From the IMG/VR virus record IMGVR_UViG_3300009184_000029, positions 124,001-188,000 of that record: a stretch of 64,000 bases of DNA, one strand, 5' to 3'. Below are positions 12,596 to 52,000 of this stretch, one piece after another. Made by a program: the position numbers and the translations under genes. Within the stretch, counting starts at the first letter, position 1. Each line of letters opens with the position of its first letter. The notes below the pieces were generated by a model. That model had not been told where the DNA came from and searched no databases. It worked only from the letters and a program-made list of their open reading frames with translations.

Positions 12596-13717
12596 TTATA
12601 TAACGTAAATATTTCTTTGGAAAGCTCTTGTTTTCATTTGTTTTTGAAGATTTTCAGCCATTAGAGCCTCTCTTTCCAATATTTTTTCAGGTCTTAATCT
12701 TGTCAGCTTACCTTCAGCCCCTGTTAGTTCTTCAACTAATTTTAACTTTTCATCTTTACCTTCAGTACTTAAAGTTTGCCATTCTAATGTTAATTCAGAA
12801 TCAGGAGTTTTCAAACTACCACTGTACTTACCTCTAACTTTAGATAATGTTTCTTTAACTGACGCAATAAAATATTTTCTAACCCAGTTTTGAGCGGGTG
12901 AATTTAAGTCTACCCAAGAAAGTGTTTCTAAAGGTACATCAGATGGTAATTTTATAATATCGGGGTTCGCTTTTAAACAACTCGCTCTATCTTTTCCTTC
13001 GGTATCATAATACCAATACCAAACTTTACCATTCATTAAATCTGCATTTCCAAAATCAAATTTACCTCCAGGTGTTTGCATAAGATGAATTGCCTTTTTA
13101 CCATCAGGTAATGCAGTAATCCTGTAAGTTTTATCTCCGGCAATTATCCTTCTTTGTATGTTAATTTCTTGCATTCTTAACATCATATCAAATGCTGGCA
13201 TCATGAAGTATGAACCTGAATATCCCATTTGAGAATATCCCGCAGGACCACCAAAACCTCCGCCCCCTAATCCCCCAAAACTCCAAGGGTCGAATAAAAT
13301 GTTATTTTGAGATGGAGGTGTAAACCACAATAATTCATTAACTTCTCTATTTGCTGGAATCTCATAAATTTGTCTGTGCCTTTCAAGTTGGATATAGTCT
13401 TTTTTTAAAACCCAATCTCCTCCAGCTTGTAGACCGACTATTTTAGAATATGCATGAGTATATCTGTCCTCATAATCAAAACTTCTAGTTACAAATGCTC
13501 TTGCCAATGAACTAGTATCCATGTTAAGATTATATAAAGATGTCCATTGAGAATCGATTAACCAATCGTGAACAAACTGAGAATAGTCACTAATTGAAAA
13601 CTCCAATAGAGTATCCATCTGTTCGTCTTCAATTTCTATCGAACGAAGAGGTGCTCCTAAAATGTGTCTTACTTTAGTGTATAGTTGACTTCTATATGGT
13701 TCTTCAATTATTGTCAT
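12596..13717 (-). CDS. Neck protein (T4 gp13-like head-tail adaptor)
   Basis: N-terminal LGAPLRSIEIEDEQ resembles gp13 LGAPxxxxE; C-terminal WVRKYFIASVKETLSKVRGKY helix; close to gp14/gp15-like genes. Confidence 0.7.
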   Translation of the reverse strand: MTIIEEPYRSQLYTKVRHILGAPLRSIEIEDEQMDTLLEFSISDYSQFVHDWLIDSQWTSLYNLNMDTSSLARAFVTRSFDYEDRYTHAYSKIVGLQAGGDWVLKKDYIQLERHRQIYEIPANREVNELLWFTPPSQNNILFDPWSFGGLGGGGFGGPAGYSQMGYSGSYFMMPAFDMMLRMQEINIQRRIIAGDKTYRITALPDGKKAIHLMQTPGGKFDFGNADLMNGKVWYWYYDTEGKDRASCLKANPDIIKLPSDVPLETLSWVDLNSPAQNWVRKYFIASVKETLSKVRGKYSGSLKTPDSELTLEWQTLSTEGKDEKLKLVEELTGAEGKLTRLRPEKILEREALMAENLQKQMKTRAFQRNIYVI

Positions 13718-13722
13718 ATTAT

Positions 13723-13729
13723 ATAAATA
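13723..13729 (-). promoter_or_regulatory. TATTTAT putative late promoter
   Basis: ATAAATA on + strand, 5 nt before ATG 13717. Confidence 0.55.
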
Positions 13730-14440
13730 TTACTCAGTTTTTTTAGTGTACGTTGTGTACAGTTCATCAACAAATTTCCAATTAATTGCGTCCCAAAAGT
13801 TTTCAATATAACTGTCTTTTTTGTTTTGATATTTTAAATAAAATGCGTGTTCCCACAAGTCTAATCCAAGTATAGGGTATCCACCTTTATCGTATATATT
13901 CATTAATGGGTTTTCTTGGTTTTGGGTTGACATAACTTTCAGTCTACCACTTTTAGTAACCACTAACCAAACCCAACCTGAACCAAATCTATTTTTAGCG
14001 ACTTTTTCAAATCTTTTTTTAAATTCTGCGTAAGTACCAAAATATTTTTTAATTTCTTTGAGAACTATTCCGTATGGTTTTTGTGGTGTTGGAGATAACA
14101 TCTTCCAAAATAGAGCGTGGTTAAATGCTCCACCCGCATTATTTTTTATAGTTGTATTATATTTTGATATTTGTTTGACAATCTCAATTAGTTCAACATC
14201 TCCATAATCTTTTTTTCTTAACGCTGAATTTAATTTTTTAACATACCCCTTATAATGTTTTTGATAATGAAACTTCATAGTTTCAGGGTCAATAAATCTT
14301 CTTATAGATGAATAAGAATATGGTAATTTATCAATACCAATAGTTCTCATTTCATTAATGAAAAATTTAGGACCAAATTCAGGATTACCTAAGTTGATTT
14401 TTTTCTCTAAAGATTCAGTTATTATGTTGAGATATTTCAT
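13730..14440 (-). CDS. sodA: Fe/Mn superoxide dismutase (Mn-type signatures) with N-terminal extension
   Basis: LPYSY, HYQKHYKGY, NNAGGAFNHALFW, FGSGWVWL, TQNQENP, DLWEHAFYLKY; GG and NQ are Mn-type signatures; ATG 14440 preferred. Confidence 0.9.
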   Translation of the reverse strand: MKYLNIITESLEKKINLGNPEFGPKFFINEMRTIGIDKLPYSYSSIRRFIDPETMKFHYQKHYKGYVKKLNSALRKKDYGDVELIEIVKQISKYNTTIKNNAGGAFNHALFWKMLSPTPQKPYGIVLKEIKKYFGTYAEFKKRFEKVAKNRFGSGWVWLVVTKSGRLKVMSTQNQENPLMNIYDKGGYPILGLDLWEHAFYLKYQNKKDSYIENFWDAINWKFVDELYTTYTKKTE

Positions 14441-14445
14441 CAACA

Positions 14446-14452
14446 ATAAATA
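14446..14452 (-). promoter_or_regulatory. TATTTAT putative late promoter
   Basis: ATAAATA on + strand, 5 nt before SOD ATG 14440. Confidence 0.55.
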
Positions 14453-14453
14453 C

Positions 14454-16196: not shown

Positions 16197-16219
16197 ACAT
16201 CAATAAATGATATCAATTA

Positions 16220-16248
16220 ATAATAAATGAAAATTGGATATTTATCAA
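16220..16248 (-). promoter_or_regulatory. Putative sigma70-like promoter of SNF2 gene
   Basis: Minus strand TTGATA(16248-16243)-N17-TATTAT(16225-16220). Confidence 0.4.
16239..16245 (+). promoter_or_regulatory. TATTTAT putative late promoter
   Basis: 4 nt before ATG 16250. Confidence 0.55.
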
Positions 16249-16249
16249 T

Positions 16250-16765
16250 ATGTCAAATAGAAATGTACCAATTACAAGATTAGGAAAATTTTTTAGTGAG
16301 AAAGATTATGATTTAGAAGTCCGAATGGGAGAAGAATGGCTTTTAGGTGATATGAATTTTACATTAGTTTTATACGCAATTGATAGACAAAAAACTAAAA
16401 CTGACGATGTTTACGGTGAAACTCTAAGTGATGGAATTAAATTTAAACCTCCTGTAGAATTTAAAGGACTTGTACAAGTTAATGCACCTGAAAATAAATT
16501 TTTAGGTAATTCAAAAATAAATCAGGTTGAACCAGGAAATGTTAGAATTTCGATTTATTTAAAACATTTGGAAGATTTGGAAATTGATATAAATTTTGGA
16601 GATTACATTGGTTATTATGAAACTGAAAATAAAGTTAGATACTATGTAGTTAATAATGACGGTAGAGTTACTTCAGACAATAAACACACATATGCAGGTT
16701 ATAAACCTTATTACAGAACAATATTGGCGTCACCTGTAACTGAAAATGAATTTAGAGGATTATAA
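16250..16765 (+). CDS. Neck/head-closure protein (T4 gp14-like)
   Basis: DDVYGE motif, size and position between gp13-like and gp15-like genes. Confidence 0.55.
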   Translation: MSNRNVPITRLGKFFSEKDYDLEVRMGEEWLLGDMNFTLVLYAIDRQKTKTDDVYGETLSDGIKFKPPVEFKGLVQVNAPENKFLGNSKINQVEPGNVRISIYLKHLEDLEIDINFGDYIGYYETENKVRYYVVNNDGRVTSDNKHTYAGYKPYYRTILASPVTENEFRGL

Positions 16766-17805
16766 TGTCGTTACCAAAAAAAGTAGTACCTAATTTGTCA
16801 TTGGTTAATCCTAAGACTGGATTATCAAGAAGAGAAGAACTTTTGGAAAGAATCCAAGAGGGGGGTACCTTTTTACCAAAGTCAATTTTACACGAAGATT
16901 TAGATAAAGGTTTTTTAGATTTTGTTAAAAATGATTTAAAATTAGTTGTAAGTGGAAAATTAGTACCTACTGTTGATATAATCATAACAACTCAAAATTG
17001 GGCTCAATTTACACAAACTTGGAATTTTCAAAATATTGATAAGAATGCGGAACCACCATTCATAACCGTAGTTAGAAGTCCTGAGGGTAAGTATGGTAGT
17101 ACACCATCATTACAATATAGAATACCTAATTCAAGACAATTTTTTTACGCTGCGGTACCAACATGGAATGGGGATAGAAAAGGGTTAGATGTATATACCA
17201 TACCACAACCAATTCCTATTGATTTAACTTTTAGTATTAAAATAATTTGCAACAGAATGAGAGAGTTAAACTCATTTAATAAAATTATTTTAGGCAAATT
17301 TTCATCAAGACAATCTTACACAAATGTTAAAGGACATTATATACCAATAATATTAAACAGTATTAGTGACGAATCTGTAAATGATTTGGAAAAGAGAAGA
17401 TATTATTCCCAAAGTTACGATTTTACAATGATGGGATTTTTAATTGATGAGGATGAATTTGAGGTTAAACCTGCGGTTAGTAGAGCATTACAATTGATTG
17501 AAGTTGATAATTCAAAAAAATTAAAAAGACCTAAAAAGTTCCCAAAAAATCCTGATACCTTTGATTTTAATTTTAATTTTAGTTCTTCTGATGATTCTCA
17601 AACACAGACAATAGAATATACATCTACTTTAAAAAATATATCCACAAATAATGTTACCACGTATTCAGTTTATATTAATAGTATTTTCTTTGGTGATAAT
17701 GTTAGTGAAATATGGATAAATCAAGGAGACACTTTAACTATTGAAATTACTAAAACAGTTTTGGGACAAGAGTCTTCTGTTAATTTTTCAGGAACGTTAA
17801 ATTAA
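16765..17805 (+). CDS. Tail terminator/sheath stabiliser (T4 gp15-like)
   Basis: PFITVVR...PIPIDLTFSIKI...MRELNSF pattern; precedes sheath. Confidence 0.55.
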   Translation: MSLPKKVVPNLSLVNPKTGLSRREELLERIQEGGTFLPKSILHEDLDKGFLDFVKNDLKLVVSGKLVPTVDIIITTQNWAQFTQTWNFQNIDKNAEPPFITVVRSPEGKYGSTPSLQYRIPNSRQFFYAAVPTWNGDRKGLDVYTIPQPIPIDLTFSIKIICNRMRELNSFNKIILGKFSSRQSYTNVKGHYIPIILNSISDESVNDLEKRRYYSQSYDFTMMGFLIDEDEFEVKPAVSRALQLIEVDNSKKLKRPKKFPKNPDTFDFNFNFSSSDDSQTQTIEYTSTLKNISTNNVTTYSVYINSIFFGDNVSEIWINQGDTLTIEITKTVLGQESSVNFSGTLN

Positions 17806-17951
17806 CCCTCTCCATATATGTCCGAATCAAGGACACAATTTTTTCTAATTAATTTCTCAACAAACTTATTAATCTTCAAACCTTTTTTTTCACAGTATTT
17901 TTTCAACACTTTATGGGTGTCTTCTGAGATTTTTAAGTTCTTAATGTTCAT
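17802..17951 (-). CDS. Ribbon-helix-helix DNA-binding protein (49 aa, missing from ORF track)
   Basis: Read manually: MNIKNLKISEDTHKVLKKYCEKKGLKINKFVEKLIRKNCVLDSDIYGEG*; strand-helix-G-helix pattern of CopG/Arc-type RHH. Confidence 0.7.
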   Translation of the reverse strand: MNIKNLKISEDTHKVLKKYCEKKGLKINKFVEKLIRKNCVLDSDIYGEG

Positions 17952-17988
17952 ACAATATAAGTATGAATAAAAGATATTTTTTTCATAC
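17947..17988. promoter_or_regulatory. Triple 7-bp repeat operator candidate
   Basis: TTCATAC(17947-53)-N7-GTATGAA(17961-67)-N14-TTCATAC(17982-88), overlapping the RHH start codon and a TACTTAT promoter variant. Confidence 0.55.
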
Positions 17989-18038
17989 CATATTATTTTA
18001 ATTACACTGAAAGTAAAGGTTTTTGTATTTTTTCAAAG

Positions 18039-18045
18039 TATTTAT
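18039..18045 (+). promoter_or_regulatory. TATTTAT putative late promoter (sheath)
   Basis: 30 nt before ATG 18076, followed by A-rich leader. Confidence 0.55.
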
Positions 18046-18075
18046 GCAATAAATAAAAAGAAATAAAACAATAAA

Positions 18076-21000
18076 ATGGCAGAATCTAATAAAGTTTTCG
18101 TATCTCCAGGTGTATATACATCGGAAAGAGACTTGTCGTTTGTAGCTCAAAGTGTGGGGGTTACAACATTAGGTATTGTTGGTGAAACCTTAAAAGGGCC
18201 AGCATTTGAACCTATCTTTATTACAAGTTATGATGAGTTTTCAACCTATTTTGGTGGAACTTCAGCTGAAAAATTTGTAAATACACAAATTCCTAAATAT
18301 GAATCGGCGTACATTGCTAAGTCATACTTACAACAATCAAATCAATTATTTGTAACAAGAGTACTTGGTTTATCAGGGTATGATGCAGGTCCTTCATGGT
18401 CAATTAAAACAATCGCAAATCCTGATGTTACAACTATGGGATTAAACGGTACCGGAACGTCATATTCCGTAGCGTTCTCAGGAAACACTGGTGGAACATA
18501 TAATTATGTTAGTTCATTCCCATCAATAATTGAATCTAATAGAACTGCAACATATACAACATTTGCTGGAGGTTCATCTACAATCCAAGAATCATTAAAT
18601 ACTTTAATTACAACTTTTCTTGGTAATGTATCGACATCAGCGAACACAATTTATTATTTTGGACCTGTTTCAGGCTATAGTGCATTAGCATCATCGTATA
18701 CTGCGGACACTAATGTATTTGGTGTGGATACCGAATCAACTGCAACAATAAATTACGCTTCAGGTACAAATGACTCTTGGTTCTACTCTAACTGGTCCCC
18801 AACAACAGGAAATGCTTACACGGGATATTCTTTCTATAGTGTGATTACAAATACAAGCGGAGCGACTGCAGGAACTTACACAGGTACTGTGTCAGGAAGA
18901 TACTATCAATTTAGTGGTACTGCTTATGTAGACTATAACAATTTAGTAATTGCAACTTTACGTTCAAGAGGTATTTCAACATACAGTAGTACTAATGGAC
19001 CAACTTATCAAGTTTCAGGAGTGAATAACGTATCATTAATTACGACAGGTTCTTATTCAGGTGTAAGTGAAAATCCATATCTAACATTTAAAGTTAGTGG
19101 TTCAACAATTGAAAATACAAACTTTGAATTTGAAACATCTTTAGATGATAATGATACAAGTTATATGAATAAAGTTTTTGGAAGAACTAACTTCGCAAAA
19201 GACAGAACTACAGTTCCATTATTTGTTGAGGAAATTTATCCAACTATGTTGTCATACGGTTACAATCAAGGATATATCAGAGGTATCAGTTCTAATTTAG
19301 TTAGTTTAAACAGTGCTAGAAGTGCGACTTCAACATCAATTGGTAACTATACTGAAAGATATCAAACCCCAGTTACTCCTTATTTAGTTTCTGAATTAAG
19401 AGGTAATAAAGTTTATCAGTTATTTAGATTTGTTTCAATATCTGACGGTAATGATGCTAATACAGAAATTAAAGTATCTGTTGCTAACATGTCATTTAAT
19501 AACTTAACATTTGATGTTATAGTTAGAGATTTCTATGACACAGATGCTAACCCTGTAGTATTAGAGAAATTTACGAACTGTACAATGGACCCTAATGAAA
19601 ATAGTTTTGTTGGTAAGAAAATTGGTTCTTCTGACGGGGAGTACGCAATAAATTCTAAATTTATAATGGTTGAGGTTAATCCTGAAGCACCAACAACGGC
19701 AATTCCTTGTGGTTTTGAAGGTTATAATACAAGACAATACTCAACTTACCCAACAAACTTACCTCCATTCCCAATTTTAAAAACTAAATACGATTTTCCT
19801 GGTGAAATTATCAGTAATCCTCCATTTGGTTCTACTTCAGGGGATGATGCTGTTACATCAGCAGGTGATAATGTAAGAAGAACTTATTTAGGTTTCTCTA
19901 CTAAAGTTGGTGTTGATACTGATTTCTTACAATATAAAGGTAAGATAAATCCTTCAAATCTTTGTACGGCAACTGAATACGACCAATGGGGTGTAAGAAC
20001 TCAAGGTTTCCACATGGATAGTGGAGCAACTGTAATTACTATCGGAACTTCATTTACAACTTCAGGTGACCCAGCGTTTGATTGTGGTGTGGCATCATTC
20101 CAATCAGAACCAACAACTGAATCAAATCCTTACTACAGATTATATTCTCGTAAGTTCACACTTGTATTCCAAGGAGGTTTTGATGGATGGGACATCTATA
20201 GAGAAAATAGAACAAACCAAGATAGATTTGCATTGGGTGGTTCAGGATTTTTGGCAGGAGCTTGTTCTTCTACAAGATACCCAACCGCATCAGGTAAACT
20301 ATTTAAATCAATAACTGTAGGTGACAACTCAACTGATTGGGCTAATACTGACTACTACGCATACTTATTGGGTATTAGTACTTTCTCAAACCCTGAAGCG
20401 GTTAACATTAACTTGTTTGTTACACCTGGCGTTGATTATACTAATAATAGTGGTGTTGTGGAATACGCGATTGATATGGTTGAGAATGACAGAGCGGATT
20501 CATTGTATATTACGACAACTCCTGACTTTAATTTATATCAACCATCAACAGATATCAGTAATTTAATTTACCCACAAGAAGCGGTTGATAACTTGGAAAC
20601 TACAGGATTAGATTCTAACTATACCGCAACTTACTACCCTTGGGTATTAACAAGAGATACTGTAAATAACACTCAAATTTATTTACCAGCAACCGCTGAG
20701 GTAACAAGAAACTTAGCATTAACCGACAACATTGCGTTCCCTTGGTTCGCAGCCGCGGGTTATACAAGAGGTATTGTAAATGCAGTTAAAGCTCGTAAAA
20801 AGTTAACTCAAGAAGATAGAGATACTCTTTATAAAGGAAGAATTAACCCAATCGCTACTTTCAATGATGTTGGAACTGTAATTTGGGGTAACAAAACTTT
20901 ACAAGTAAGAGAATCAGCTTTAGATAGAATTAACGTAAGAAGATTGTTATTACAAGCACGTAAATTGATTTCAGCGGTAGCTGTAAGGTTATTGTTTGAA

Positions 21001-21234: not shown

Positions 21235-21248
21235 AATTAACTAACTAT

Positions 21249-21278
21249 AAAAAAACCCTCACGAAAGTGGGGGTTTTT
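21249..21278 (+). terminator. Intrinsic terminator after sheath
   Basis: AAAAACCCTCAC-GAAA-GTGGGGGTTTTT hairpin with GNRA loop and T-tract. Confidence 0.85.
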
Positions 21279-21289
21279 AATTTAAAGAA

Positions 21290-21296
21290 TATTTAT
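21290..21296 (+). promoter_or_regulatory. TATTTAT putative late promoter
   Basis: 4 nt before ATG 21301. Confidence 0.55.
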
Positions 21297-21300
21297 AATT

Positions 21301-22125
21301 ATGAAATTGTATATCGTCGAAAAAATGGATGAAAAAAATACACCCGATATGGATTATTGGGCGTTTGATTGGGATGATAATATTATGATTATGCCAACTA
21401 AAATTGTTGTTAAAGACTCTAATGGTAAGGAAATTGGAATGTCAACTGAAGATTGGGCAGAATATAAAGATATTGTTGGTAAAGAAGATTTTGAATATGA
21501 AGGTCATACTATTGTAGGTTTGGCAAATAACCCTTTTAGATATTTTAGGACTGAATATGATAAAATGTTCACAATAGATGCTATGTTAGGTAAATTAGGT
21601 CCTGCTTGGGATGACTTTAAAAACGCAATAAATGGAGGTTCTATTTTTGCAATCATCACTGCTAGAGGACATTCTCCATTAAAGATAAGAAGTACCATTG
21701 AAAAAATGATTGACGGTAATTTCAGGGGTATTTCTAAAAAAGAACTTGTTAAAAATTTAAGAAAGTATAGAAGTATTGCTGGTGAAGAAGATATGCCTGA
21801 TGATAAGTTAATTGACGCTTACATGGATATGAATAGATATTATCCTGTGACTTTTGAATCGGGAAGTGTCCAATCTCCGGCGGAATTAAAAAATGAAAAA
21901 TTAAGAGAGTTTGAGGAGTATGTGAAATATATCGCTAATATTGTTCATAAACCTGCACACTTTAAAAATATGGTTTCAAATAAATTTGCACCAGTGATAC
22001 ATTTTTCAGATGACGATGAAACTAATTTAGAATATTCATATAAGAGAAACAAAGACAGACCAGATAACATTATTAATTATGTTACTACCAAAGGAGGAGT
22101 TAAAAAACCTTATGAATTAAAATAA
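21301..22125 (+). CDS. HAD-superfamily hydrolase/phosphatase
   Basis: Motif I AFDWDDN, motif II IITARG, motif III Lys, motif IV FSDDD. Confidence 0.75.
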   Translation: MKLYIVEKMDEKNTPDMDYWAFDWDDNIMIMPTKIVVKDSNGKEIGMSTEDWAEYKDIVGKEDFEYEGHTIVGLANNPFRYFRTEYDKMFTIDAMLGKLGPAWDDFKNAINGGSIFAIITARGHSPLKIRSTIEKMIDGNFRGISKKELVKNLRKYRSIAGEEDMPDDKLIDAYMDMNRYYPVTFESGSVQSPAELKNEKLREFEEYVKYIANIVHKPAHFKNMVSNKFAPVIHFSDDDETNLEYSYKRNKDRPDNIINYVTTKGGVKKPYELK

Positions 22126-22196
22126 ATAATTTGCTAGGTATATTGCAATTATCCCCAAAAAAAAACTAAAGTAAATAAAAAATCTTTTTATTGGTA

Positions 22197-22208
22197 TATT
22201 TATAAATA
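22197..22208 (+). promoter_or_regulatory. TATTTAT putative late promoter (tube), inside palindrome TATTTATAAATA
   Basis: 31 nt before ATG 22235, A-rich leader. Confidence 0.55.
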
Positions 22209-22234
22209 AATAAAACGAAAAAAAATTAAATGAT

Positions 22235-22723
22235 ATGGCAGATTTGCTAATGAAAATGCCCGTACCTTACGAGCCAAAAAGACAGAATAGATTTATTCTA
22301 AGATTTCCGTCTTCGTTGGGTATTAACGAATGGTTCGTACAAGCAGCGTCAAGACCAACTATAACAATCGGTTCAACTCCGATTCCGTTTTTGAATACTG
22401 AAACATATGTTGCAGGAAGATTTAAGTGGAGTACTATACAAGTTACATTTATTGACCCAATCGGTCCTTCGGCGTCTCAAGCTTTGATGGAATGGGTTAG
22501 ATTACACGCTGAGTCTGTTACAGGTCGTATGGGATACGCCGCAGGTTATAAGAAAAATGTTGATTTAGAAATGTTAGACCCAACAGGAGTTGTGATTGAA
22601 AAGTGGATTTTGGAAGGTTGTTTTATAACAAACGCTGGTTTCGGGTCACTTGGTTACGCTAATGAAGGTTTGGTTAATATTCAGGTAACACTACAACCTG
22701 ATAGATGTATTTTAGTTTACTAA
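22235..22723 (+). CDS. Tail tube protein (T4 gp19-like)
   Basis: YEPKRQNRF, AGRFKWSTIQVTFIDP, EWVRL, GYKKNV, LDPTGVVIEKWILEG; 162 aa downstream of sheath. Confidence 0.9.
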   Translation: MADLLMKMPVPYEPKRQNRFILRFPSSLGINEWFVQAASRPTITIGSTPIPFLNTETYVAGRFKWSTIQVTFIDPIGPSASQALMEWVRLHAESVTGRMGYAAGYKKNVDLEMLDPTGVVIEKWILEGCFITNAGFGSLGYANEGLVNIQVTLQPDRCILVY

Positions 22724-22747
22724 AAAATTAATTACTATTATATTTTT

Positions 22748-22774
22748 AAAAAAGTCCTTAATGGGCTTTTTTTT
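22748..22774 (+). terminator. Intrinsic terminator after tube
   Basis: AAAAGTCC-TTAAT-GGGCTTTTTTTT. Confidence 0.7.
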
Positions 22775-22817
22775 GTTTACAAATAATTTTTTAAGTATAC
22801 TTTTTTAATAAAAAAAA

Positions 22818-23709: not shown

Positions 23710-23711
23710 GG

Positions 23712-23718
23712 TATTTAT
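23712..23718 (+). promoter_or_regulatory. TATTTAT putative late promoter
   Basis: 16 nt before ATG 23735. Confidence 0.5.
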
Positions 23719-25751: not shown

Positions 25752-25758
25752 TATTTAT
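25752..25758 (+). promoter_or_regulatory. TATTTAT putative late promoter
   Basis: 12 nt before ATG 25771. Confidence 0.5.
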
Positions 25759-37438: not shown

Positions 37439-37445
37439 TATTTAT
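37439..37445 (+). promoter_or_regulatory. TATTTAT putative late promoter
   Basis: 13 nt before ATG 37459. Confidence 0.5.
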
Positions 37446-37458: not shown

Positions 37459-37683
37459 ATGGACATTAAAACTGCAATTAATAATTATCTTGGTAAACAA
37501 GCAAGAATTACTGAAAAGGATAATGGTAATGGATTTAAAGAAGTTTGTGATTTAGATACTGGAGATTGTTATACAGTAAGAATGAAAGATGGTCTTATTG
37601 AAAGAGTTGACAACACATATCAAACAAACAAAAAAATAAAAGTAGAAACTAATAACGGATTTAAACAACTTCTAAATGGCTAA
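37459..37683 (+). CDS. Small hypothetical protein
   Basis: 74 aa, CDLDTGDC motif, overlaps next start. Confidence 0.6.
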   Translation: MDIKTAINNYLGKQARITEKDNGNGFKEVCDLDTGDCYTVRMKDGLIERVDNTYQTNKKIKVETNNGFKQLLNG

Positions 37684-38341: not shown

Positions 38342-38373
38342 TTTGACAAAAACGGCTGACACACTTACATTTG
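38342..38373 (+). promoter_or_regulatory. Host sigma-A promoter of SSB/replication operon
   Basis: TTTG(38342-45)-N20-TACATTTG(38366-73) matches Bacteroidota TTTG/TAnnTTTG; also TTGACA-N17-TACATT. Confidence 0.7.
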
Positions 38374-39243: not shown

Positions 39244-39248
39244 TTTAT

Positions 39249-39294
39249 ATGGATGGACACTTGAATTGACAAAGTGTCCATCCATTCTTATTTT
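39249..39294 (+). promoter_or_regulatory. Perfect 14-bp inverted repeat with TTGACA in its loop; promoter and/or terminator before recA-like gene
   Basis: ATGGATGGACACTT-GAATTGACA-AAGTGTCCATCCAT; TTGACA(39266-71)-N17-TATTTT(39289-94). Confidence 0.65.
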
Positions 39295-39324
39295 TATACA
39301 AACAATTTAAACGAATAGACATTT

Positions 39325-41328: not shown

Positions 41329-41339
41329 AAAAAACAATT

Positions 41340-41795: not shown

Positions 41796-41820
41796 TATTT
41801 AATTAAAAAAGGGATTTATT

Positions 41821-43191
41821 ATGGCTGACAAAAATTTTGAATATTTAGGAGACACTTTTCAATTACAATTACTTAATCAAATTGTAATTGATAAGGATTT
41901 CGCCCACTCTATTATCGAGGTAATGGAACCGGGTTATTTTGAGAACAAGTACTATAAGTTATTTGTTCAAATGGTTAAAGAATATTATTCAAAATTTGAG
42001 CATACCCCTAGTTTCGACACACTCCAACAAAAAGCTAAAAGTGAAATTAGTCAAGAATTATTATTAAAGATAACCTTAGACACAATTAATGATATAAAAA
42101 ACATATCTGATGATGGAAGTCAGTTTGTTCAAGAAAAGGCTCTTAAATTCTGTAAACAACAAGAATTACAGAAAGTTATGGATAAGGCCAAAAAAATAAT
42201 TGAACATGGTGAATTTGAAAATTACGATACTTTAGAGGAGATGGTTCGTGAAGCGTTACAAGTTGGTAATGTTGATAGAGGGACTGGGGATGTTTTTGAA
42301 AATTTGGATGATGTTTTAGCCGATGACTATAGACACCCAATTCCAATGGGAATACCGGGTATTGATAACTTACTAAAAGGAGGACTTGCAAAAGGTGAAA
42401 TTGGTGTGATATTGGCTCCAACAGGAGTTGGTAAATCAACACTAACTACAAAAATTGCGAATAACGCTTTTAATCTTGGGTTTAATGTGTTACAAATATT
42501 TTTTGAGGATAATTTTAAAATTATACAAAGAAAACATTTTACATGTTGGACAGGTATTGCACCTGACGACCTTGGAAATCATAAAGAAAAAGTGTTAGAG
42601 AAAGTTGCGGAGATTAAAGAAACAATGACTAATAAGTTAATTATGAAGAAGTTACCTTCAGATACATTAACTATGGGTCAGATTAAAAATCAAATCCGTA
42701 AAATGATTGCTGATGGTATCCACGTTGATATGGTCATATTAGATTATATCGATTGTGTTACACCTGAAAAGGCTTTAGAAGATGAATGGAAATCTGAAGG
42801 TTCGGTTATGAGAGCGTTTGAGGCGATGTGTCATGAATTGAATATCGTTGGATGGACCGCAACACAGGGTAATAGAAGTTCAATATCATCAGATGTTGTA
42901 ACAACTGACCAAATGGGTGGTTCAATTAAAAAGGCTCAAGTTGGTCACGTTATTATTACTGTGGCAAAATCATTACAACAAAAAGAGTTAAACCTTGCAA
43001 CAATCGCGATTACAAAATCAAGGATTGGTAAAGATGGTGTTGTATTTGAGAATTGTAAATTTAACAATGAAATGTTAGAAATTGATACAGAAAGTACCAC
43101 AACATTCTTAGGACTTGAAGAACAAAAAGAGGAGAGGAATCGAAATAGGATTAAGGAAATTATGGATAAAAGAAAACAACAACAAGTATAA
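41821..43191 (+). CDS. Replicative DNA helicase (DnaB/T4 gp41-like)
   Basis: GGLAKGEIGVILAPTGVGKS, ILDYID, WTATQGNR, KSRIG. Confidence 0.9.
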   Translation: MADKNFEYLGDTFQLQLLNQIVIDKDFAHSIIEVMEPGYFENKYYKLFVQMVKEYYSKFEHTPSFDTLQQKAKSEISQELLLKITLDTINDIKNISDDGSQFVQEKALKFCKQQELQKVMDKAKKIIEHGEFENYDTLEEMVREALQVGNVDRGTGDVFENLDDVLADDYRHPIPMGIPGIDNLLKGGLAKGEIGVILAPTGVGKSTLTTKIANNAFNLGFNVLQIFFEDNFKIIQRKHFTCWTGIAPDDLGNHKEKVLEKVAEIKETMTNKLIMKKLPSDTLTMGQIKNQIRKMIADGIHVDMVILDYIDCVTPEKALEDEWKSEGSVMRAFEAMCHELNIVGWTATQGNRSSISSDVVTTDQMGGSIKKAQVGHVIITVAKSLQQKELNLATIAITKSRIGKDGVVFENCKFNNEMLEIDTESTTTFLGLEEQKEERNRNRIKEIMDKRKQQQV

Positions 43192-43219
43192 TTATTAAAA
43201 CAGAAACAGAAAAAAAATT

Positions 43220-44167
43220 ATGGAAAAAATATTAAAAGAGAACCCAAACAGATTTGTGATTTTCCCAATACAATACAATGATATATGGGAATACTATAAA
43301 ATGCACCAAGCCGCGTTTTGGACTGCGGAAGAAGTTGATTTAAGTGGTGACATTAGAGATTGGGAAAATCTTTCAGAAAATGAACAATATTTTGTTAAAA
43401 ATGTTCTATCGTTTTTTGCGGCGTCTGACGGTATTGTTAATGAGAATTTAGCTGAAAACTTTTACAGAGAGGTACAATACCCTGAGGCTAAATTTTTCTA
43501 TGGGATTCAACTTGCAATGGAGAACATTCACTCATTAATGTATTCTTTATTGATTGACACTTACATCTCAAATGAAGATGAGAAGAATAAATGTTTCACA
43601 GCTTTGGATAACCTACCTGCAGTTCAAAAGAAAGCCAAATGGGCTTTGGATTGGATTGAAAATGCATCCTTCCAAGAAAGATTGGTGGCATTTGCGGCAG
43701 TTGAGGGTATCTTTTTCTCAGGTTCATTTTGTTCAATATTTTGGTTAAAATCTCGTGGAATTATGCAAGGTTTGTGTAATGCGAACTCTTTGATTTTTAA
43801 AGATGAAAATTTACATTGTGATTTTGCAATTCATTTATTGAATAATCACGTAGAAAACAAACCGAGTGAAAAGAGAATTAAAGAAATTCTTTTATCAGCT
43901 TTGGAGATTGAAAAAGAATTTATCACAGAATCACTTCCGGTTTCATTAATTGGTATGAACCAAAATTTAATGAAACAATATTTGGAGTTTGTGGTTGATG
44001 GACTACTTGTTAAATTTGGTTGTAAGAAACAATTTAATGTTGAACAACCATTTAAATTTATGGAACAAATTGCCGTTGAAACTAAAGGTAATTTCTTCGA
44101 ATCTAGAACAGTTGAATACCAAAAAGCAAAATTAAATGAGACCCTCTCATTTACAGATGACTTTTAA
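43220..44167 (+). CDS. nrdB: Ribonucleotide reductase class Ia beta subunit
   Basis: [48 protein letters not shown]. Confidence 0.97.
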
Positions 44168-44186
44168 TTTACTATCTTTTTAAACT

Positions 44187-46619: not shown

Positions 46620-46635
46620 AAAAATCCGATGTGTT

Positions 46636-46664
46636 ATCCCGAGCTAGGTCGGGATTTTTTATTT
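46636..46664 (+). terminator. Intrinsic terminator ending replication/RNR operon
   Basis: ATCCCGA-GCTAGG-TCGGGAT-TTTTT. Confidence 0.8.
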
Positions 46665-46697
46665 TCATTATGATTTACTGAAAATTTTACAACATTA

Positions 46698-46704
46698 TAT
46701 TTAT
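46698..46704 (+). promoter_or_regulatory. TATTTAT putative late promoter
   Basis: 5 nt before ATG 46710. Confidence 0.55.
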
Positions 46705-46709
46705 TTGAT

Positions 46710-47168
46710 ATGGCAGATGGAAGAACATACGGTATAAATTTTCCTTTTAAAGATTCTTTAAATGGTAAATATTTGGATTTGTCCGATACTGCTGATGAAG
46801 AAATCAGAAGTAATTTAATCCACTTATTATTATCTAGAAAAGGAAGTAGGTATTTTTTACCTGATTTTGGGACTCGATTATATGAATATATTTTTGAACC
46901 ACTTGATGGACCAACATTTACCGATATTGAAGCGGAAATCAGAGATGCTGTTGAGAAGTATATTCCAAATCTAACAATAAATGGAATTAATATAACTTCA
47001 ACTGAAAGTGAAGAGGGGAGTGATGTTGTGACTACAAATCAAGACATTTTAAGAACTGTTGATGCTGGCTCACAATCAATACCTGATTATACTGCGAAAA
47101 TAAGAGTTGACTACACAATAACAAATGATGCATTTAAGAGCAAAGATTTTGTAATAATTAACCTATAA
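46710..47168 (+). CDS. Baseplate wedge protein (gp25/GPW family)
   Basis: IRSNLIHLLLSRKGSRYFLPDFGTRLYEYIFEP. Confidence 0.9.
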   Translation: MADGRTYGINFPFKDSLNGKYLDLSDTADEEIRSNLIHLLLSRKGSRYFLPDFGTRLYEYIFEPLDGPTFTDIEAEIRDAVEKYIPNLTINGINITSTESEEGSDVVTTNQDILRTVDAGSQSIPDYTAKIRVDYTITNDAFKSKDFVIINL

Positions 47169-47172
47169 AAAT

Positions 47173-49011: not shown

Positions 49012-49042
49012 TCTGAATATTTTTATAAAATAGTAATAAAAC

Positions 49043-49049
49043 TATTTAT
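49043..49049 (+). promoter_or_regulatory. TATTTAT putative late promoter
   Basis: 6 nt before ATG 49056. Confidence 0.55.
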
Positions 49050-49055
49050 AAAAAT

Positions 49056-52000
49056 ATGGGTAAAAACTTTAGAATTAGGACAAAGGTTGGAGTAGATACG
49101 AGAGTTGAAGCCAAGTTAGAACAAGATTTTGATTTTTTAGAAATTCTTTCTTTAAAATTAACTCAGCAACAAGTTTACAATAGACCAACCTCAAACTATG
49201 GAGTTTTATGTGGTAGAGTTTACGCTAATAATGGTTTTGGTGTTCCTAACGCAAAAGTATCAGTTTTTATTCCTCTAACTGATGAGGATTCTAACAACCC
49301 TGTAATATCAAGAATATATCCTTATAGAAATTTAAATACTCAAAATGAAGATGGGTATCGGTATAATTTATTACCATATGTTGCATCATATACAGGACAC
49401 GTACCAACAGGAACATTTCCTGATAGAGAAGACATTTTAAAAGATAAATCTCTAAGTTATACCTATGAAAAATATTATAAATTCACCGCCAAAACAAATG
49501 ATGCGGGTGATTTTATGATATTTGGAGCACCTGTTGGGAATCACACAATTGTGATGGATGTTGACGTTTCTGACATTGGTCAGTTTTCATTAACACCCCA
49601 AGATTTATTAAGAATAGGTAGAGCAACTGAAGCTCAACTTGATGGTGCTAAATTTAAAGAATCAACAGATTTAGATTCTCTACCTCAAATAATCGGAATT
49701 AAAAAGACAATAGATATTAATCCATTTTGGGGTGACCCTGATTTGGCGACAATCGCGGTAACAAGAGTTGACTTTAATCTTTTAGAGGAGGCAAATATTG
49801 AATTTAAACCTACATGTGTATTCATGGGTTCATTAATTTCAGGTATTGATACTAAGGCAATTTCTAAAACGTGTAAAGTTAAAGTTAGAGCAGGTGATTT
49901 ATGTGAATTAATTACAGGTCCTGGACAAATTTTAGCGATTAGACAAACAGTTAATTTTGATAAATTAGGAAGACCCATATTAGAACAGTATAAGGTAGAA
50001 AATGACGGACAGGTAATTGATGAAAACGGTACTTGGATGATTGACCTACCAATGAATATGGATTACGTGTATACTGATGAAGAAGGTAAACAACAAATAA
50101 GTTATGACCCAAGTATTGGAATACCAACAAAAGGTAGATATAGATTTAAAATTAAATGGAATCAATCTGACAAGTCAACAGAACAATTAAAAAGAGGGTA
50201 TTTCTTAATTCCCAACGTTAAAGAATATGGATGGGATAAAGATAATTTGGGATTAAATCCGGCGAAAGATTTAAACCCTCCCGCAACTGTACCCCCAACA
50301 ATTAGTGCTGCGACAATAAGTACACCATCGGTAACTGGACCTCCTGTTATATCTTACCAAATTGACCAACCATTGGTTGATTTTGCTAATACTTCTTTTG
50401 GTAAATTTACAAGGTCATATTCATTTAGTTTAAGTTGGTTTGATTATGTAAATCCTCAGTCAGCAATTAATTGTGACGACACATTCTATGAGTTCCAATA
50501 TAATAAAGTTTATACTGTATCTCAGTTAATTGACAAATATAGAAGTGGAAAATTACCTGCAAGATTTTTAGGATTTAAAAATTGTTTAGATGATAAATGC
50601 GCCGGAAATACTGAAAAATTTCCAGTTAATGACGGACACTATAACATAACATTTTTATACGTATTACTTACCGCATTAATAACTTTAGCAAAACCAATTG
50701 TTTTAATTATTGTTTTAATATTTGCGATTTTAGCTTGGATTTACAGATTAATTTCTGAGTTTATTTGCGATAAAATAGTTCCGTTACTTAGAAATTTAGG
50801 AAGAACAAGAACTGTTGCCGGTTTTGATTTTGTTATTTGTCCTACGTGTAATGGTACTGCAGATGATTTAGAGAATAAATGGTGTGATAGACCAAACCCA
50901 TTTACAGATAAAAGATTTCCTTTGTTATTACAAGATGATGGTGATTGTTCATTTTGTGACTGTAAAGATAGTGGAGAATCTTTGGCGGGAAATGTATATG
51001 GAGCGGTTAACTCTAGTTGTTTGGCAGACCTTTCATCAACATCTAAATGGTTATATGATGTTAGTATAAGTACAGAATTACAGTCACCACCTCAAATAAA
51101 TTTATTGGCGGGATTTACGTCTCCATTTTTTAATTTCGCAACAAGAATGCCAACCACATGTGTATATCCTCAAACATATTCGTATGGTTCATTAGCATTT
51201 GATTATGGGTCTGTGTTTTTAACTGAGCAAGGTGTTGGACCCGCAGTCTTTTCACCGTCATTAACAATTTCTGAAAGATTAAATTTATTTAATACTAAGG
51301 CTAAGTATTTCAATAATGGTGGATTAGATATAGATACATTTACATTACCGGCAAGTCATGGTTCAAGTTTAATTAGTACTGAATTAAGCCAAATGAATGT
51401 TAACAAAGGAGGATGGAATAGAATTAAACTTACAATTTCTTCCGAAGATGCGATTCAAGACCAAACAGATTGGCTAGCAGCTCAAAAACTACCATTACCT
51501 GGAGGGGCATACCCAAGTGACGGTTCTTATCACTTGGATAATGTAATGATTTTACTTGTTGATGAGAACTGTAAATTGGGTACTACAAGAGCTGGTACTT
51601 TAGTTACTTTTAATAATCCTACGTTATCATCCGACGTTAATTTAACAGGATTTACAACAACTTCCCAAGGACAAGGAGGTCAAACAATATTTACTCCAAC
51701 GTTTAATCCATATGGTGGAAGACAAATAACGGGAACTCCAATACATAAATCAGCTCAAACTTCAACAACTGCGGGTAAAAATTTGGATGTTTGGTATGCT
51801 GACCCAAGTGATGCTAATGTTGAGCCAGTAATTTTTAATCCTAATCTAATTGTAAAATGGAACCTTATAACTGACCCGTATGTACAAAGTTTAAAAAATA
51901 TTATAGATGCTAACCAAACAATTTATGGTGGGCCATTTAATATTAACAATATAAGGGGTGATGCTCCAGGGTCCACATATACAGATGAACTTACATTCCC

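What the first reader, a model, noticed from the sequence alone, without database searches (positions are those of the whole stretch)
13715..49058. TATTTAT late-promoter regulon whose leader length tracks protein copy number
Seen: TATTTAT lies on the sense strand in front of 11 putative late transcription units on both strands. Gap to ATG: 13717(5), 14440(5), 16250(4), 18076(30), 21301(4), 22235(31), 23735(16), 25771(12), 37459(13), 46710(5), 49056(6); a TACTTAT variant sits 5 nt before 17951. Pol, SSB and recA instead carry TTGACA/TTTG-type promoters, although shorter ATTTAT near-matches occur before some replication genes. Known: the T4 late promoter is TATAAATA (gp55); this motif corresponds to its reverse complement. 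Inference: a phage-specific late sigma recognises a -10-only element; 4-6 nt gaps would give leaderless mRNAs for low-copy neck/baseplate proteins, while the two highest-copy proteins (sheath, tube) get ~30-nt A-rich leaders, so leader length may set virion stoichiometry.
Basis: partly seen in the sequence, partly recalled or inferred. Interest (0 to 1): 0.8.

Follow-up and report, generated by a model that had tools for sequence, protein, structure and literature searches.

The report
TATTTAT promoter of Bacteroidota jumbo phages
The 7-letter word TATTTAT sits just upstream of the tail, baseplate and some other operons of this 223-kb lake phage and hundreds of relatives and very probably marks where transcription starts, in some genes right at the start codon, but what reads it is unknown and the idea that leader length sets protein copy number is only weakly supported.

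Summary
All 11 sites and gaps are correct, and I found one more exact site plus two one-letter variants. TATTTAT precedes 12 of 38 genes on the sense strand, against 1.8 +/- 1.3 in dinucleotide shuffles, and it is the top upstream 7-mer.

It is conserved gene by gene in about 240 related loci: sheath 37/37, tube 78/78, gp25-like 63/65, against 0 for SSB, UvsX and RNR. It is also the top upstream word in the distant cultured phages immuto and Mel-JY01; RM378 uses TATTTAA.

Three sequence signals place a start site 5-7 nt after the motif:
- Motif-to-ATG gaps are 4-6 nt or at least 12 nt.
- T precedes the ATG in 91% of short-gap sites.
- Leadered sites carry A at +5 to +7.

So the short-gap genes probably give leaderless mRNAs. 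No 5' ends were measured.

The phage does encode a conserved RpoD-like sigma, 20 kb outside the window and under a host-type promoter. But immuto and Mel-JY01 use TATTTAT without any recognisable sigma or gp55, so the reader of the motif is unidentified.

Leader class is conserved for sheath, tube and gp25-like genes but varies for others. The MCP genes of immuto-like relatives have no motif of their own, so the stoichiometry idea is weak.

The parts
625..631 (+).
13723..13729 (-). TATTTAT, 5 nt before the ATG at 13717 (head-tail adaptor-like, 373 aa); relatives have gaps of 12-19 nt
14446..14452 (-). TATTTAT, 5 nt before the ATG at 14440 (Fe/Mn superoxide dismutase); relatives mostly 12-25 nt
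16239..16245 (+). TATTTAT, 4 nt before the ATG at 16250 (171 aa, unknown); 27/29 orthologs have the motif, 18 of them with a 4-6-nt gap
17957..17963 (-). TACTTAT variant, 5 nt before the ATG at 17951 of the 49-aa Arc-like RHH regulator gene (17802-17951, minus strand), which diverges from the sheath promoter
18039..18045 (+). TATTTAT, 30 nt before the sheath ATG at 18076; motif in 37/37 orthologs, gap 21-42 nt; extra conserved box AAAGTAAAG-TTTTTG with TTTG at -17
21290..21296 (+). TATTTAT, 4 nt before the ATG at 21301 (274 aa), directly after a terminator-like hairpin; 27/68 orthologs have the motif, 22 with a 4-6-nt gap
22197..22203 (+). TATTTAT, 31 nt before the tube ATG at 22235; 78/78 orthologs have the motif within 90 nt, gap at least 29 nt; AGTAAA box 26-30 nt upstream in 45/66
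23712..23718 (+). TATTTAT, 16 nt before the ATG at 23735 (664 aa); 23/23 orthologs, gap variable (0-23 nt in 21)
25752..25758 (+). TATTTAT, 12 nt before the ATG at 25771 (1635 aa); 28/28 orthologs, gap 12-20 nt in 27
37439..37445 (+). TATTTAT, 13 nt before the ATG at 37459 (74 aa); 5/5 orthologs, gap 12-15 nt
41796..41802 (+). TATTTAA variant, 18 nt before the DnaB-like helicase ATG at 41821, followed by AAA at +5 to +7; 25/25 relatives have exact TATTTAT here, gap 19-24 nt
46698..46704 (+). TATTTAT, 5 nt before the ATG at 46710 (gp25-like baseplate wedge protein), after the RNR terminator; 63/65 orthologs, gap 4-5 nt in 59
49043..49049 (+). TATTTAT, 6 nt before the ATG at 49056 (2175 aa); 68/71 orthologs have the motif but mostly at 14-17 nt; TTTG at -20 in 33/48
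38342..38370 (+). Different promoter type before SSB (38401): TTTGACA-N9-GGCTGACAC; the TTTGACA...GGCTGACAC-TTAT architecture is conserved in 6 of 9 relatives
9408..9436 (+). TTGACA-N17-TAGATT string, 59 nt before the family B DNA polymerase ATG at 9496

Best explanation
TATTTAT is the core of a phage-specific promoter class. It occupies about -12 to -6, and transcription starts at an A, usually preceded by a pyrimidine, 5-7 nt after the last T. This class drives the virion-structural operons of the phage (sheath, tube, baseplate, fibre-like and neck genes) and a few other genes (SOD, an Arc-like regulator, DnaB).

Where the ATG lies 4-6 nt after the motif, the mRNA begins with AUG and is leaderless. 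Elsewhere the leaders are about 6-30 nt long and A-rich.

The element sits in the same place as the -7 box of the Bacteroidota housekeeping sigma (TAnnTTTG, -12 to -5). It shares T-12, A-11, T-8 and T-6 with that box, but it has an invariant A at -7 and almost never G at -5, so unmodified host holoenzyme should not read it.

The same word marks structural genes in distant relatives whose reported hosts belong to other phyla. I therefore infer that a phage-encoded factor redirects host RNA polymerase to it. That factor is not identified. The family's own RpoD-like sigma (source contig 207,897-208,694, outside the window) is an early gene under a host-type promoter, and it more likely serves the TTGACA-type promoters of replication genes.

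Shown: enrichment, strand and position specificity, gene-by-gene conservation, and the start-site sequence signature. Inferred: promoter function, the exact start site, leaderless translation, and a phage-encoded reader.
For: - Enrichment and top rank among upstream 7-mers in the window.
- Conservation of the exact 7-mer with drifting flanks at orthologous positions: tube 75/80 within 70 nt and 78/78 within 90 nt, sheath 37/37, 25771 family 28/28, 23735 family 23/23, 46710 family 63/65, 49056 family 68/71, DnaB 25/25. Absence at helicase 1/20, SSB 0/10, UvsX 0/15, RNR 0/31 and 0/35, and operon-internal genes 0-2.
- Top upstream 7-mer in immuto (17/55 genes in the structural region; 45 intergenic sense sites genome-wide), in Mel-JY01 (10/37), and in 80 immuto-like head loci (263/934 genes); RM378 uses TATTTAA (10/49).
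- Sites lie directly behind terminator-like hairpins (21301, 46710) and in back-to-back divergent pairs.
- Start-site signature: pooled unique contexts have gaps of 4 (33), 5 (43), 6 (10), 7-9 (0), 10 (1), 11 (0), then 12 or more. The base before the ATG is T in 78/86 short-gap sites against 55/113 leadered sites. In 250 leadered sites, +5, +6 and +7 are A in 82-86%. An independent data set reproduces this: purine at +5 in 94%, pyrimidine before the ATG in 17/21.
- Host geometry: the -7 box lies at -12 to -5 with 4-5 nt to the start site (PMC6847099, PMC9723704).
- Host-type TTTG-N17-23-TAnnTTTG precedes the sigma operon in 18/23 relatives, and only 1/39 genes has an SD-like sequence; both indicate a Bacteroidota host.
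Against: - No transcript 5' end was measured. The metatranscriptome contigs were too fragmentary.
- The 7-11-nt void is not absolute in the immuto-like data set (17 sites, with gene starts not validated), and one site on the source contig has a 7-nt gap.
- In immuto the motif also precedes some genes in the non-structural half of the genome, so 'late' is an inference from gene function.
- No reading factor is identified.
- Leaderless mRNAs are rare in flavobacteria (5.5%), so a whole class of them would be unusual.
- Only about 114 kb of the 223-kb source genome was inspected.
Confidence: 0.7

Rival explanations
1. One reading: the phage's own sigma factor, the 266-aa RpoD-like protein at source contig 207,897-208,694, made early from a host-type promoter, is what recognises TATTTAT.
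For: A conserved sigma70-family gene exists in the source genome and has 548 relatives in IMG/VR, 67-80% identical in the top 80. Its operon carries a host-type -33/-7 promoter, so the timing fits a cascade. Region 2.4 differs from housekeeping sigmas just after the conserved WW-RQ core. A TATTTAT site follows directly after its stop codon.
Against: The complete genomes of immuto and Mel-JY01 use TATTTAT before structural genes but have no hit to the family sigma profile, an ECF profile or a gp55 profile. The sigma's region 4.2 helix is nearly identical to that of housekeeping SigA, which fits a -35 box. A TTGACA-N16-18-TAnnnT class is sense-biased in the window's family (30 sense, 7 antisense) and absent from immuto. 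TATTTAT promoters have no general -35 element.
Confidence: 0.25
2. TATTTAT is a weak variant of the host sigmaA -7 box, read by host holoenzyme itself, perhaps with a phage activator or an appropriator of host sigma (as MotA/AsiA act in T4), and not by a new sigma-like factor.
For: It has the same position relative to the inferred start site as the host -7 box and shares T-12, A-11, T-8 and T-6. Some promoters (sheath, 49056 family) carry a fixed upstream TTTG. No sigma is detectable in immuto or Mel-JY01.
Against: T-7 and G-5 are nearly invariant in host promoters (PMC6847099), whereas here -7 is always A and the position after the motif is G in only 4-5% of sites. The same word is used by Mel-JY01 (reported host Microcystis, SD-type leaders), and a one-letter variant by RM378 (host Rhodothermus).
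Confidence: 0.2
3. The element acts at the RNA level, as a processing site for a phage or host endoribonuclease or as a translation signal, and not as a promoter.
For: It lies within or next to 5' untranslated regions. AU-rich single-stranded RNA is a common RNase target. No 5'-end chemistry is available.
Against: The distance to the ATG ranges from 4 to more than 60 nt and is gene-specific, so it is not a fixed translation signal. In Mel-JY01, ordinary SD sequences lie between the motif and the ATG. Sites follow terminator-like hairpins with no room for another promoter. Divergent back-to-back copies occur. The Y(-1)/A(+1) signature at a fixed distance is what RNA polymerase start sites look like.
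Confidence: 0.07
4. Leader length, set by the motif-to-ATG distance, is the device that sets virion stoichiometry: leaderless for low-copy proteins and about 30-nt A-rich leaders for high-copy ones.
For: Sheath (34/35 unique contexts) and tube (63/63) always have gaps over 25 nt, while gp25-like is 4-6 nt in 41/43. In F. johnsoniae, A at -3, -6, -12 and -13 boosts initiation, so leaders of at least 13 nt can carry more positive determinants.
Against: The leader class flips between relatives for 13717, 14440, 16250, 21301, 23735 and 49056. Large, presumably low-copy proteins (25771 and 49056 families) and DnaB use 12-24 nt. In immuto, sheath and tube (26 and 22 nt) are close to terminase and portal (18 and 17 nt). 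In 78 immuto-like loci the MCP has no motif within 120 nt and follows the scaffold-like gene after a 25-35-nt A-rich spacer. Most structural genes are operon-internal. Sheath and tube promoters also carry extra upstream boxes, so promoter strength is a confounder.
Confidence: 0.15
5. Chance or compositional artefact of AT-rich intergenic DNA.
For: The genome is about 31% G+C, and the word is not over-represented in the window as a whole.
Against: 12 genes against 1.76 +/- 1.26 in dinucleotide shuffles of the same upstream regions. Control words of the same composition lack the pattern. The exact word is conserved while its flanks drift.
Confidence: 0.01

Closest known systems
T4-type late promoter (TATAAATA at about -10, read by gp55 with gp33 and the sliding clamp)
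   Same: A short AT-rich element in the -10 region with no general -35 box, placed before virion-structural genes of a phage with a T4-like replication and morphogenesis core (gp25-like, J-like/gp6-like, sheath, tube, UvsX, gp32-like SSB, DnaB/gp41-like).
   Different: The sense-strand word is TATTTAT(A), the reverse complement of the T4 consensus. No gp55 homologue is detectable by profile search in 3.4 Mb of clade DNA, in two complete relatives, or in about 114 kb of the source genome. A large subset has the ATG at the inferred start site.
Bacteroidota housekeeping promoter (-33 TTTG / -7 TAnnTTTG; PMC6847099, PMC9723704)
   Same: Same position relative to the (inferred) start site, and shared T-12, A-11, T-8 and T-6. 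True examples of this host type occur in the same phage family before the sigma operon.
   Different: Invariant A instead of T at -7; G at -5 is avoided; no general -33 box; associated with structural genes; also found in relatives whose hosts are outside the Bacteroidota.
Phage sigma cascades (e.g. Bacillus phage SPO1 gp28, then gp33/34; own knowledge) and sigma70-like genes of huge phages
   Same: The phage family encodes a conserved sigma70-family protein expressed from a host-type promoter.
   Different: It has not been shown to read TATTTAT. Its -35-reading helix is canonical, and relatives that lack it keep the motif.
Late promoters of phiKZ-like jumbo phages (phiKZ TATG with G as the start site; AR9 AACA-N6-T(A/G); PMC5312081)
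   Same: Short promoters adjacent to the start site, specific to a jumbo-phage lineage and found by upstream alignment. The tube protein is distantly similar to those of phiKZ-like phages.
   Different: Those are read by phage multisubunit RNAPs, and AR9 leaders are 26-491 nt. No RNAP-like protein was found here, and the motif differs.

Membership tests
T4-type gp55-dependent late promoter | Single AT-rich element in the -10 region, with no conserved -35 element | tested here: met
   Motif-anchored frequency matrices show only the 7-mer, A at -1 and A at +5 to +7 as general features. Upstream boxes are gene-specific.
T4-type gp55-dependent late promoter | Consensus TATAAATA on the non-template (sense) strand | tested here: not met
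   The sense-strand word is TATTTAT(A). ATAAATA on the sense strand shows no comparable gene linkage or gap structure.
T4-type gp55-dependent late promoter | The genome encodes a gp55 homologue | tested here: not met
   T4 gp55 by phmmer and a 116-sequence gp55 profile give no significant hit in the window, in about 114 kb of the source genome, in complete immuto and Mel-JY01, or in all fetched loci. About half of the source genome was not seen.
T4-type gp55-dependent late promoter | Precedes late (virion-structural) genes and is absent before early and replication genes | tested here: inconclusive
   It precedes structural operons and is absent before SSB, UvsX, RNR, PolB and helicase. But it also precedes DnaB, SOD and an Arc-like regulator, and no expression timing data exist.
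T4-type gp55-dependent late promoter | Activity depends on the sliding clamp and gp33 (coupling to replication) | not testable with these tools
   Needs biochemistry or genetics.
Bacteroidota sigmaA promoter (-33/-7) | -7 box TAnnTTTG at -12 to -5, with nearly invariant T-7 and G-5 | tested here: not met
   The position matches, but -7 is A and the base after the motif is G in only 4-5% of sites.
Bacteroidota sigmaA promoter (-33/-7) | -33 TTTG about 17-23 nt upstream of the -7 box | tested here: not met
   TTTG is fixed only in the sheath (-17) and 49056-family (-20) promoters, at shorter spacing. Genuine host-type pairs occur before the sigma operon.
Phage-encoded sigma70-family cascade | The phage encodes a sigma70-family protein with regions 2 and 4 | tested here: met
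   L262:10001-10798 (source contig 207,897-208,694): Pfam r2 and r4, NCBIfam RpoD_Cterm 1.5e-51, aligned to solved SigA structures.
Phage-encoded sigma70-family cascade | That sigma recognises the promoter class in question | tested here: inconclusive
The phylogenetic profile argues against it: immuto and Mel-JY01 have the motif without the sigma, and the TTGACA/TAnnnT class co-occurs with the sigma.
Leaderless mRNA | The transcript 5' end coincides with the A of the start codon | tested here: inconclusive
   Indirect only: bimodal gaps with a void at 7-11 nt, T at -1 in 91% of short-gap sites, and the A of the ATG at the same +5 to +7 positions that are A in leadered promoters. RNA contigs gave no 5' ends.

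The most novel reading that the evidence does not exclude
A globally abundant clade of large and jumbo myoviruses uses one conserved late-promoter word, TATTTA(T/A). The clade has hundreds of IMG/VR contigs from lakes and seas, and cultured members on Flavobacterium, Rhodothermus and, as reported, Microcystis. The word would be read by a transcription factor unrelated, at the sequence level, to both sigma70 and T4 gp55. A conserved subset of late genes would be expressed as leaderless mRNAs in a phylum where leaderless mRNAs are rare. That would make a two-tier (leaderless versus A-rich leader) translation programme part of virion assembly control.
Probability: 0.3. Interest if true: 0.8.

Novelty: new variant of a known kind. 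Interest (0 to 1): 0.6.

Why it matters
Transcription programmes of Bacteroidota phages are almost unknown, and these hosts use unusual promoters and ribosomes that ignore Shine-Dalgarno sequences. A single 7-mer that marks structural operons across hundreds of uncultured lake and marine phages gives:
- an annotation tool for operon starts and gene starts in this clade;
- a directly testable system, because immuto on Flavobacterium sp. LMO8 is cultured, for finding a late factor that current sequence models do not recognise;
- a natural series of leaderless, short-leader and long-leader genes for studying SD-independent translation.

I found no paper describing the element.

Tried and rejected
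- Megablast of the sheath-tube region against GenBank phages found no match.
- An E. coli-type sigma70 promoter scan showed no enrichment (106 found, 104.9 expected).
- I first read TAnnTTTG before SSB and UvsX as host-type promoters. This was rejected for SSB relatives (0/9). The UvsX 'TTGACA' lies in a conserved hairpin.
- I checked the giant proteins (1635, 2138 and 2175 aa) as possible hidden RNA polymerases. None has a Pfam, PHROG or PDB sequence match. Fold prediction was not tried.
- The ECF-like sigma of RM378 and the extra sigma gene in L103 are sporadic, not conserved.
- I tested a link to phage ribosomal protein bS21. It is present in Mel-JY01 but in only 3/80 head loci and never under the motif, so I dropped it.
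- A BLAST core-gene comparison of four phages found no shared small candidate factor except a 77-aa Zn-finger-like protein with no family match.
- Walking upstream on the source contig met only a long glycosyltransferase cluster. The head module of the window's own family was not reached, so its MCP leader is untested.
- The large protein search with the phage sigma returned only other phage-family members and not its nearest cellular relatives.

Full report
WHAT THE WINDOW IS

The window is positions 124,001-188,000 of a 222,829-bp lake-metagenome contig, IMGVR_UViG_3300009184_000029, also filed as JGI 3300009184 Ga0114976_10000001. The contig is a jumbo myovirus with about 31% G+C and no close relative in GenBank phages.

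PHROGs and Pfam assign these genes:
- family B DNA polymerase (9496)
- head-tail adaptor-like protein (13717, minus strand)
- Fe/Mn superoxide dismutase (14440, minus strand)
- helicase (16196, minus strand)
- a 49-aa Arc-like regulator (17951, minus strand)
- sheath (18076), tube (22235) and baseplate hub (22818)
- gp25-like proteins (30680, 46710) and a J-like baseplate protein (47173)
- SSB (38401), UvsX (39325), FEN-type exonuclease (40369), DnaB (41821) and RNR beta and alpha (43220, 44187)

Several very large proteins remain unassigned. Only 1 of 39 genes has a Shine-Dalgarno-like sequence.

The word is rarer in the window than shuffles predict: 35 found, about 57 expected. But 16 of the 35 copies lie in the 2.7% of the window that is non-coding. 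With curated starts, 12 of 38 genes carry it on the sense strand within 50 nt, against 1.76 +/- 1.26 (maximum 7) in 5000 dinucleotide shuffles of the same regions, and 5 carry it antisense. It is the top upstream 7-mer in an unbiased scan.

Of the 18 genes with a real non-coding gap upstream, the 9 that lack the exact word are PolB, helicase, SSB, UvsX, FEN exonuclease, RNR-beta, the hub gene, and the two genes with one-letter variants.

CONSERVATION

Tube, baseplate and sigma queries each found at least 548 related stretches in IMG/VR, and I analysed 80 loci for each.

The exact 7-mer is kept at orthologous positions while its flanks drift:

Gene family | Orthologs with the motif
tube | 75/80 within 70 nt; 78/78 within 90 nt
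sheath | 37/37
25771 family | 28/28
23735 family | 23/23
16250 family | 27/29
46710 (gp25-like) | 63/65
49056 family | 68/71
37459 family | 5/5
DnaB | 25/25

It is absent where the window lacks it:

Gene family | Orthologs with the motif
helicase | 1/20
SSB | 0/10
UvsX | 0/15
exonuclease | 0/5
RNR beta, alpha | 0/31, 0/35
16765 (operon-internal) | 1/32
30680, 30993 (operon-internal) | 0/36 each
47173 (operon-internal) | 2/76
55583 (operon-internal) | 0/37

Only the 7-mer, a preferred A just 5' of it and an A-rich stretch a few bases downstream are general features. Other boxes are gene-specific: AGTAAA 26-30 nt upstream at tube promoters, TTTG at -17 at sheath promoters, and TTTG at -20 in the 49056 family.

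THE ELEMENT IS MUCH OLDER THAN THIS FAMILY

- Flavobacterium phage vB_FspM_immuto (tube 36% identical, same replication-module order): TATTTAT is the top upstream 7-mer of the structural region (17/55 genes: terminase, portal, sheath, tube, hub, tape measure). It marks 45 intergenic sense sites genome-wide.
- Microcystis phage Mel-JY01, whose leaders carry GGAG-type SD sequences: again the top upstream word in the head-tail region (10/37 genes).
- Rhodothermus phage RM378: the top upstream word is TATTTAA (10/49 genes), including before portal, with one-off forms before sheath and tube.
- 80 immuto-like head-module loci (30-42% G+C): TATTTAT is the top upstream 7-mer, before 263/934 genes.

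I found no paper describing this element. The papers on the immuto group and on lake bS21 phages do not discuss promoters.

WHERE TRANSCRIPTION PROBABLY STARTS

1. In unique contexts upstream of orthologs of window genes, the motif-to-ATG gap is 4 (33 sites), 5 (43) or 6 (10), then 0 sites at 7-9, 1 at 10 and 0 at 11, and many at 12 or more. Seven gene families have members in both the short class and a longer class, and only one site (a 49056-family member at 10 nt) falls between.
2. The base before the ATG is T in 78/86 short-gap sites, against 55/113 leadered sites.
3. In 250 leadered sites, positions +5, +6 and +7 after the motif are A in 82-86%, against 47-66% at neighbouring positions. 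These are exactly the positions the A of the ATG occupies at gaps of 4-6 nt.
4. The independent immuto-like set reproduces this: purine at +5 in 94% of sites, and a pyrimidine before the ATG in 17/21 short-gap sites. There the dip at 6-9 nt is not absolute, and those gene starts were not validated by homology.

A pyrimidine at -1 and a purine at +1 at a fixed distance from a -10-like element is the usual look of a bacterial start site (established knowledge). An ATG 1-5 nt downstream of a start site would give a leader too short to be either leaderless or leadered, which would explain the void.

This puts the motif at about -12 to -6. In F. johnsoniae and F. psychrophilum the sigmaA -7 box TAnnTTTG lies at -12 to -5, with 4-5 nt to the start site (PMC6847099, PMC9723704). 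The phage word shares T-12, A-11, T-8 and T-6 with it. It has A where the host has its nearly invariant T-7, and G follows the motif in only 4-5% of sites where the host has G-5.

Direct RNA evidence could not be obtained. Four lake metatranscriptomes hold the phage or close relatives, but only as short contigs.

WHO READS IT

T4 gp55, alone or as a 116-sequence profile, finds nothing in 3.4 Mb of clade DNA.

Walking downstream of the window revealed a 266-aa sigma70-family gene two genes after the SbcC-like gene. It is present at 100% identity on the source contig at 207,897-208,694 (L262:10001-10798). It is RpoD/RpoS-like, with regions 1.2, 2 and 4, and scores below every NCBIfam equivalog cut-off. 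It is a conserved gene of the family: 548 relatives, the top 80 being 67-80% identical, some on the same contigs as my tube and baseplate loci.

Its small operon is preceded by TAnnTTTG in 21/23 unique relatives and by the full TTTG-N17-23-TAnnTTTG pair in 18/23. That indicates a Bacteroidota host and early expression by host holoenzyme.

However, profiles of this sigma family, of ECF sigmas and of gp55 find nothing in the complete genomes of immuto and Mel-JY01, and both use TATTTAT. RM378 has only an unrelated ECF-like sigma. One family member, L103, has an extra sigma gene that no other locus shares.

In the window's family a third, E. coli-like class, TTGACA-N16-18-TAnnnT, is biased to the sense strand upstream of genes (30 sense, 7 antisense). 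Immuto has none. In the source genome such strings precede PolB, SSB, UvsX and genes in the primase region. The SSB architecture, TTTGACA...GGCTGACAC-TTAT, is conserved in 6 of 9 relatives.

Aligned to solved SigA structures, the phage sigma's region 4.2 helix is almost identical to the housekeeping one, and region 2.3 keeps the aromatic core. From my own knowledge, region 4.2 is the -35-reading helix.

The more economical reading is that this sigma serves the TTGACA-type replication-gene promoters, and that TATTTAT is read with the help of a factor common to the whole clade that current sequence models do not recognise. I give the simple 'this sigma reads TATTTAT' model about 0.25.

LEADER LENGTH AND COPY NUMBER

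For:
- Leader class is strongly conserved for three genes: sheath (34/35 unique contexts over 25 nt), tube (63/63 over 25 nt) and gp25-like (41/43 at 4-6 nt).
- A at -3, -6, -12 and -13 boosts initiation in F. johnsoniae, so longer A-rich leaders could translate better.

Against:
- The window's short gaps at 13717, 14440 and 49056 are 12-25 nt in nearly all relatives.
- 14440 encodes SOD, which is not a virion protein.
- Big, presumably low-copy proteins and DnaB use 12-24 nt.
- Immuto's sheath and tube leaders (26 and 22 nt) are close to those of terminase and portal (18 and 17 nt).
- In 78 immuto-like loci the MCP gene has no motif within 120 nt. It follows the scaffold-like gene after a 25-35-nt A-rich spacer.
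- Sheath and tube promoters also carry extra upstream boxes, so promoter strength is a confounder.

The window family's own MCP was not reached. I rate the stoichiometry idea at about 0.15. A softer version is plausible but untested: high-copy genes keep at least 25 nt of A-rich sequence upstream of the ATG, however it is produced.

VERDICT

TATTTAT is a real, ancient, clade-wide promoter-like element with an inferred start site 5-7 nt downstream and a conserved leaderless subclass. It works like a T4-type late promoter, but it is not a member of that family: the consensus differs and no gp55 is detectable. Its reader is unknown. It is a new variant of a known kind of system, apparently undescribed, and directly testable in a cultured relative.

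Noticed in passing
window 17802-17951 (-) and 17952-18038: A 49-aa Arc-like ribbon-helix-helix regulator (PHROG 3180, E 9e-6) is transcribed divergently from the sheath promoter. It is conserved in 39 of 42 relatives that contain the sheath start. Relatives carry an operator-like TTCTACC-TTTT-TTCTACC direct repeat before its ATG; the window has GTATGAA-N14-TTCATAC instead. It may regulate the sheath promoter region or itself.
   Followed up: partly
window 13730-14440 (-): A phage-encoded Fe/Mn superoxide dismutase (Pfam Sod_Fe_C 9e-38, Sod_Fe_N 1e-20) sits under a TATTTAT site. It is an auxiliary metabolic gene among the neck and replication genes.
   Followed up: partly
L262:10001-10798 (source contig 207,897-208,694; also L260:12890-13690): A conserved 266-aa RpoD-like sigma factor with regions 1.2, 2 and 4 and no Pfam region 3. 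It has 548 relatives in IMG/VR and is preceded, via a DUF6576 gene, by a textbook Bacteroidota TTTG-N21-TATATTTG promoter.
   Followed up: yes
window 38342-38370; relatives in L100-L163: The SSB gene has a conserved promoter-like architecture, TTTGACA-N9-10-GGCTGACAC-TTAT, containing two TGACA copies. It is distinct from both TATTTAT and the host -7 box.
   Followed up: partly
window 39244-39324: A conserved GGACAC...GTGTCC hairpin lies between SSB and UvsX in the window and in most relatives.
   Followed up: partly
L103:2181-3167 (-): One family member carries an additional sigma70-family gene of about 300 aa (regions 1.2, 2 and 4) inserted between the RNR-alpha and gp25-like genes. It is homologous to the family sigma (E 8e-26) and absent at that position in all other loci.
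   Followed up: partly
L094:31211-31810 (-) (RM378, NC_004735 128,329-128,928): RM378 encodes an ECF-like sigma (Sigma70_r2 4e-14) two genes from its major head protein gene, and uses TATTTAA rather than TATTTAT before its late genes.
   Followed up: partly
L091:7674-7901 (Mel-JY01): Mel-JY01 has a ribosomal protein bS21 gene in its head module and SD-type leaders. bS21 occurs in only 3 of 80 immuto-like head loci.
   Followed up: yes
L087, L255, L257, L258 (source contig about 94-124 kb): A very long cluster of glycosyltransferase, sugar epimerase, aminotransferase and methyltransferase genes plus a dCTP deaminase/dUTPase gene lies upstream of the window. This suggests extensive glycan or DNA-sugar modification capacity.
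   Followed up: no
L085, L088, L260 (about 10-20 kb downstream of the window): Fibre-region proteins with PTL_trimer and faint SprB-repeat Pfam hits. Further on lie a DnaJ-like chaperone, an Hc1 histone-like protein, an Amidase_2 endolysin-like gene and a sulfotransferase.
   Followed up: no
L088:17663-17896 and immuto 43121-43339: A 77-aa protein, annotated 'Zn-finger protein' in immuto (gp193), is the only small unassigned protein shared by immuto and the source phage at BLAST level. It has no PHROG match.
   Followed up: partly
L255:6032 (-) and 6045 (+), source contig about 110,665-110,684: Back-to-back divergent TATTTAT copies 13 nt apart drive a minus-strand small-gene operon (gap 17 nt) and a 735-aa gene. 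The latter has a 7-nt gap, one of the rare cases inside the 7-11-nt void.
   Followed up: no
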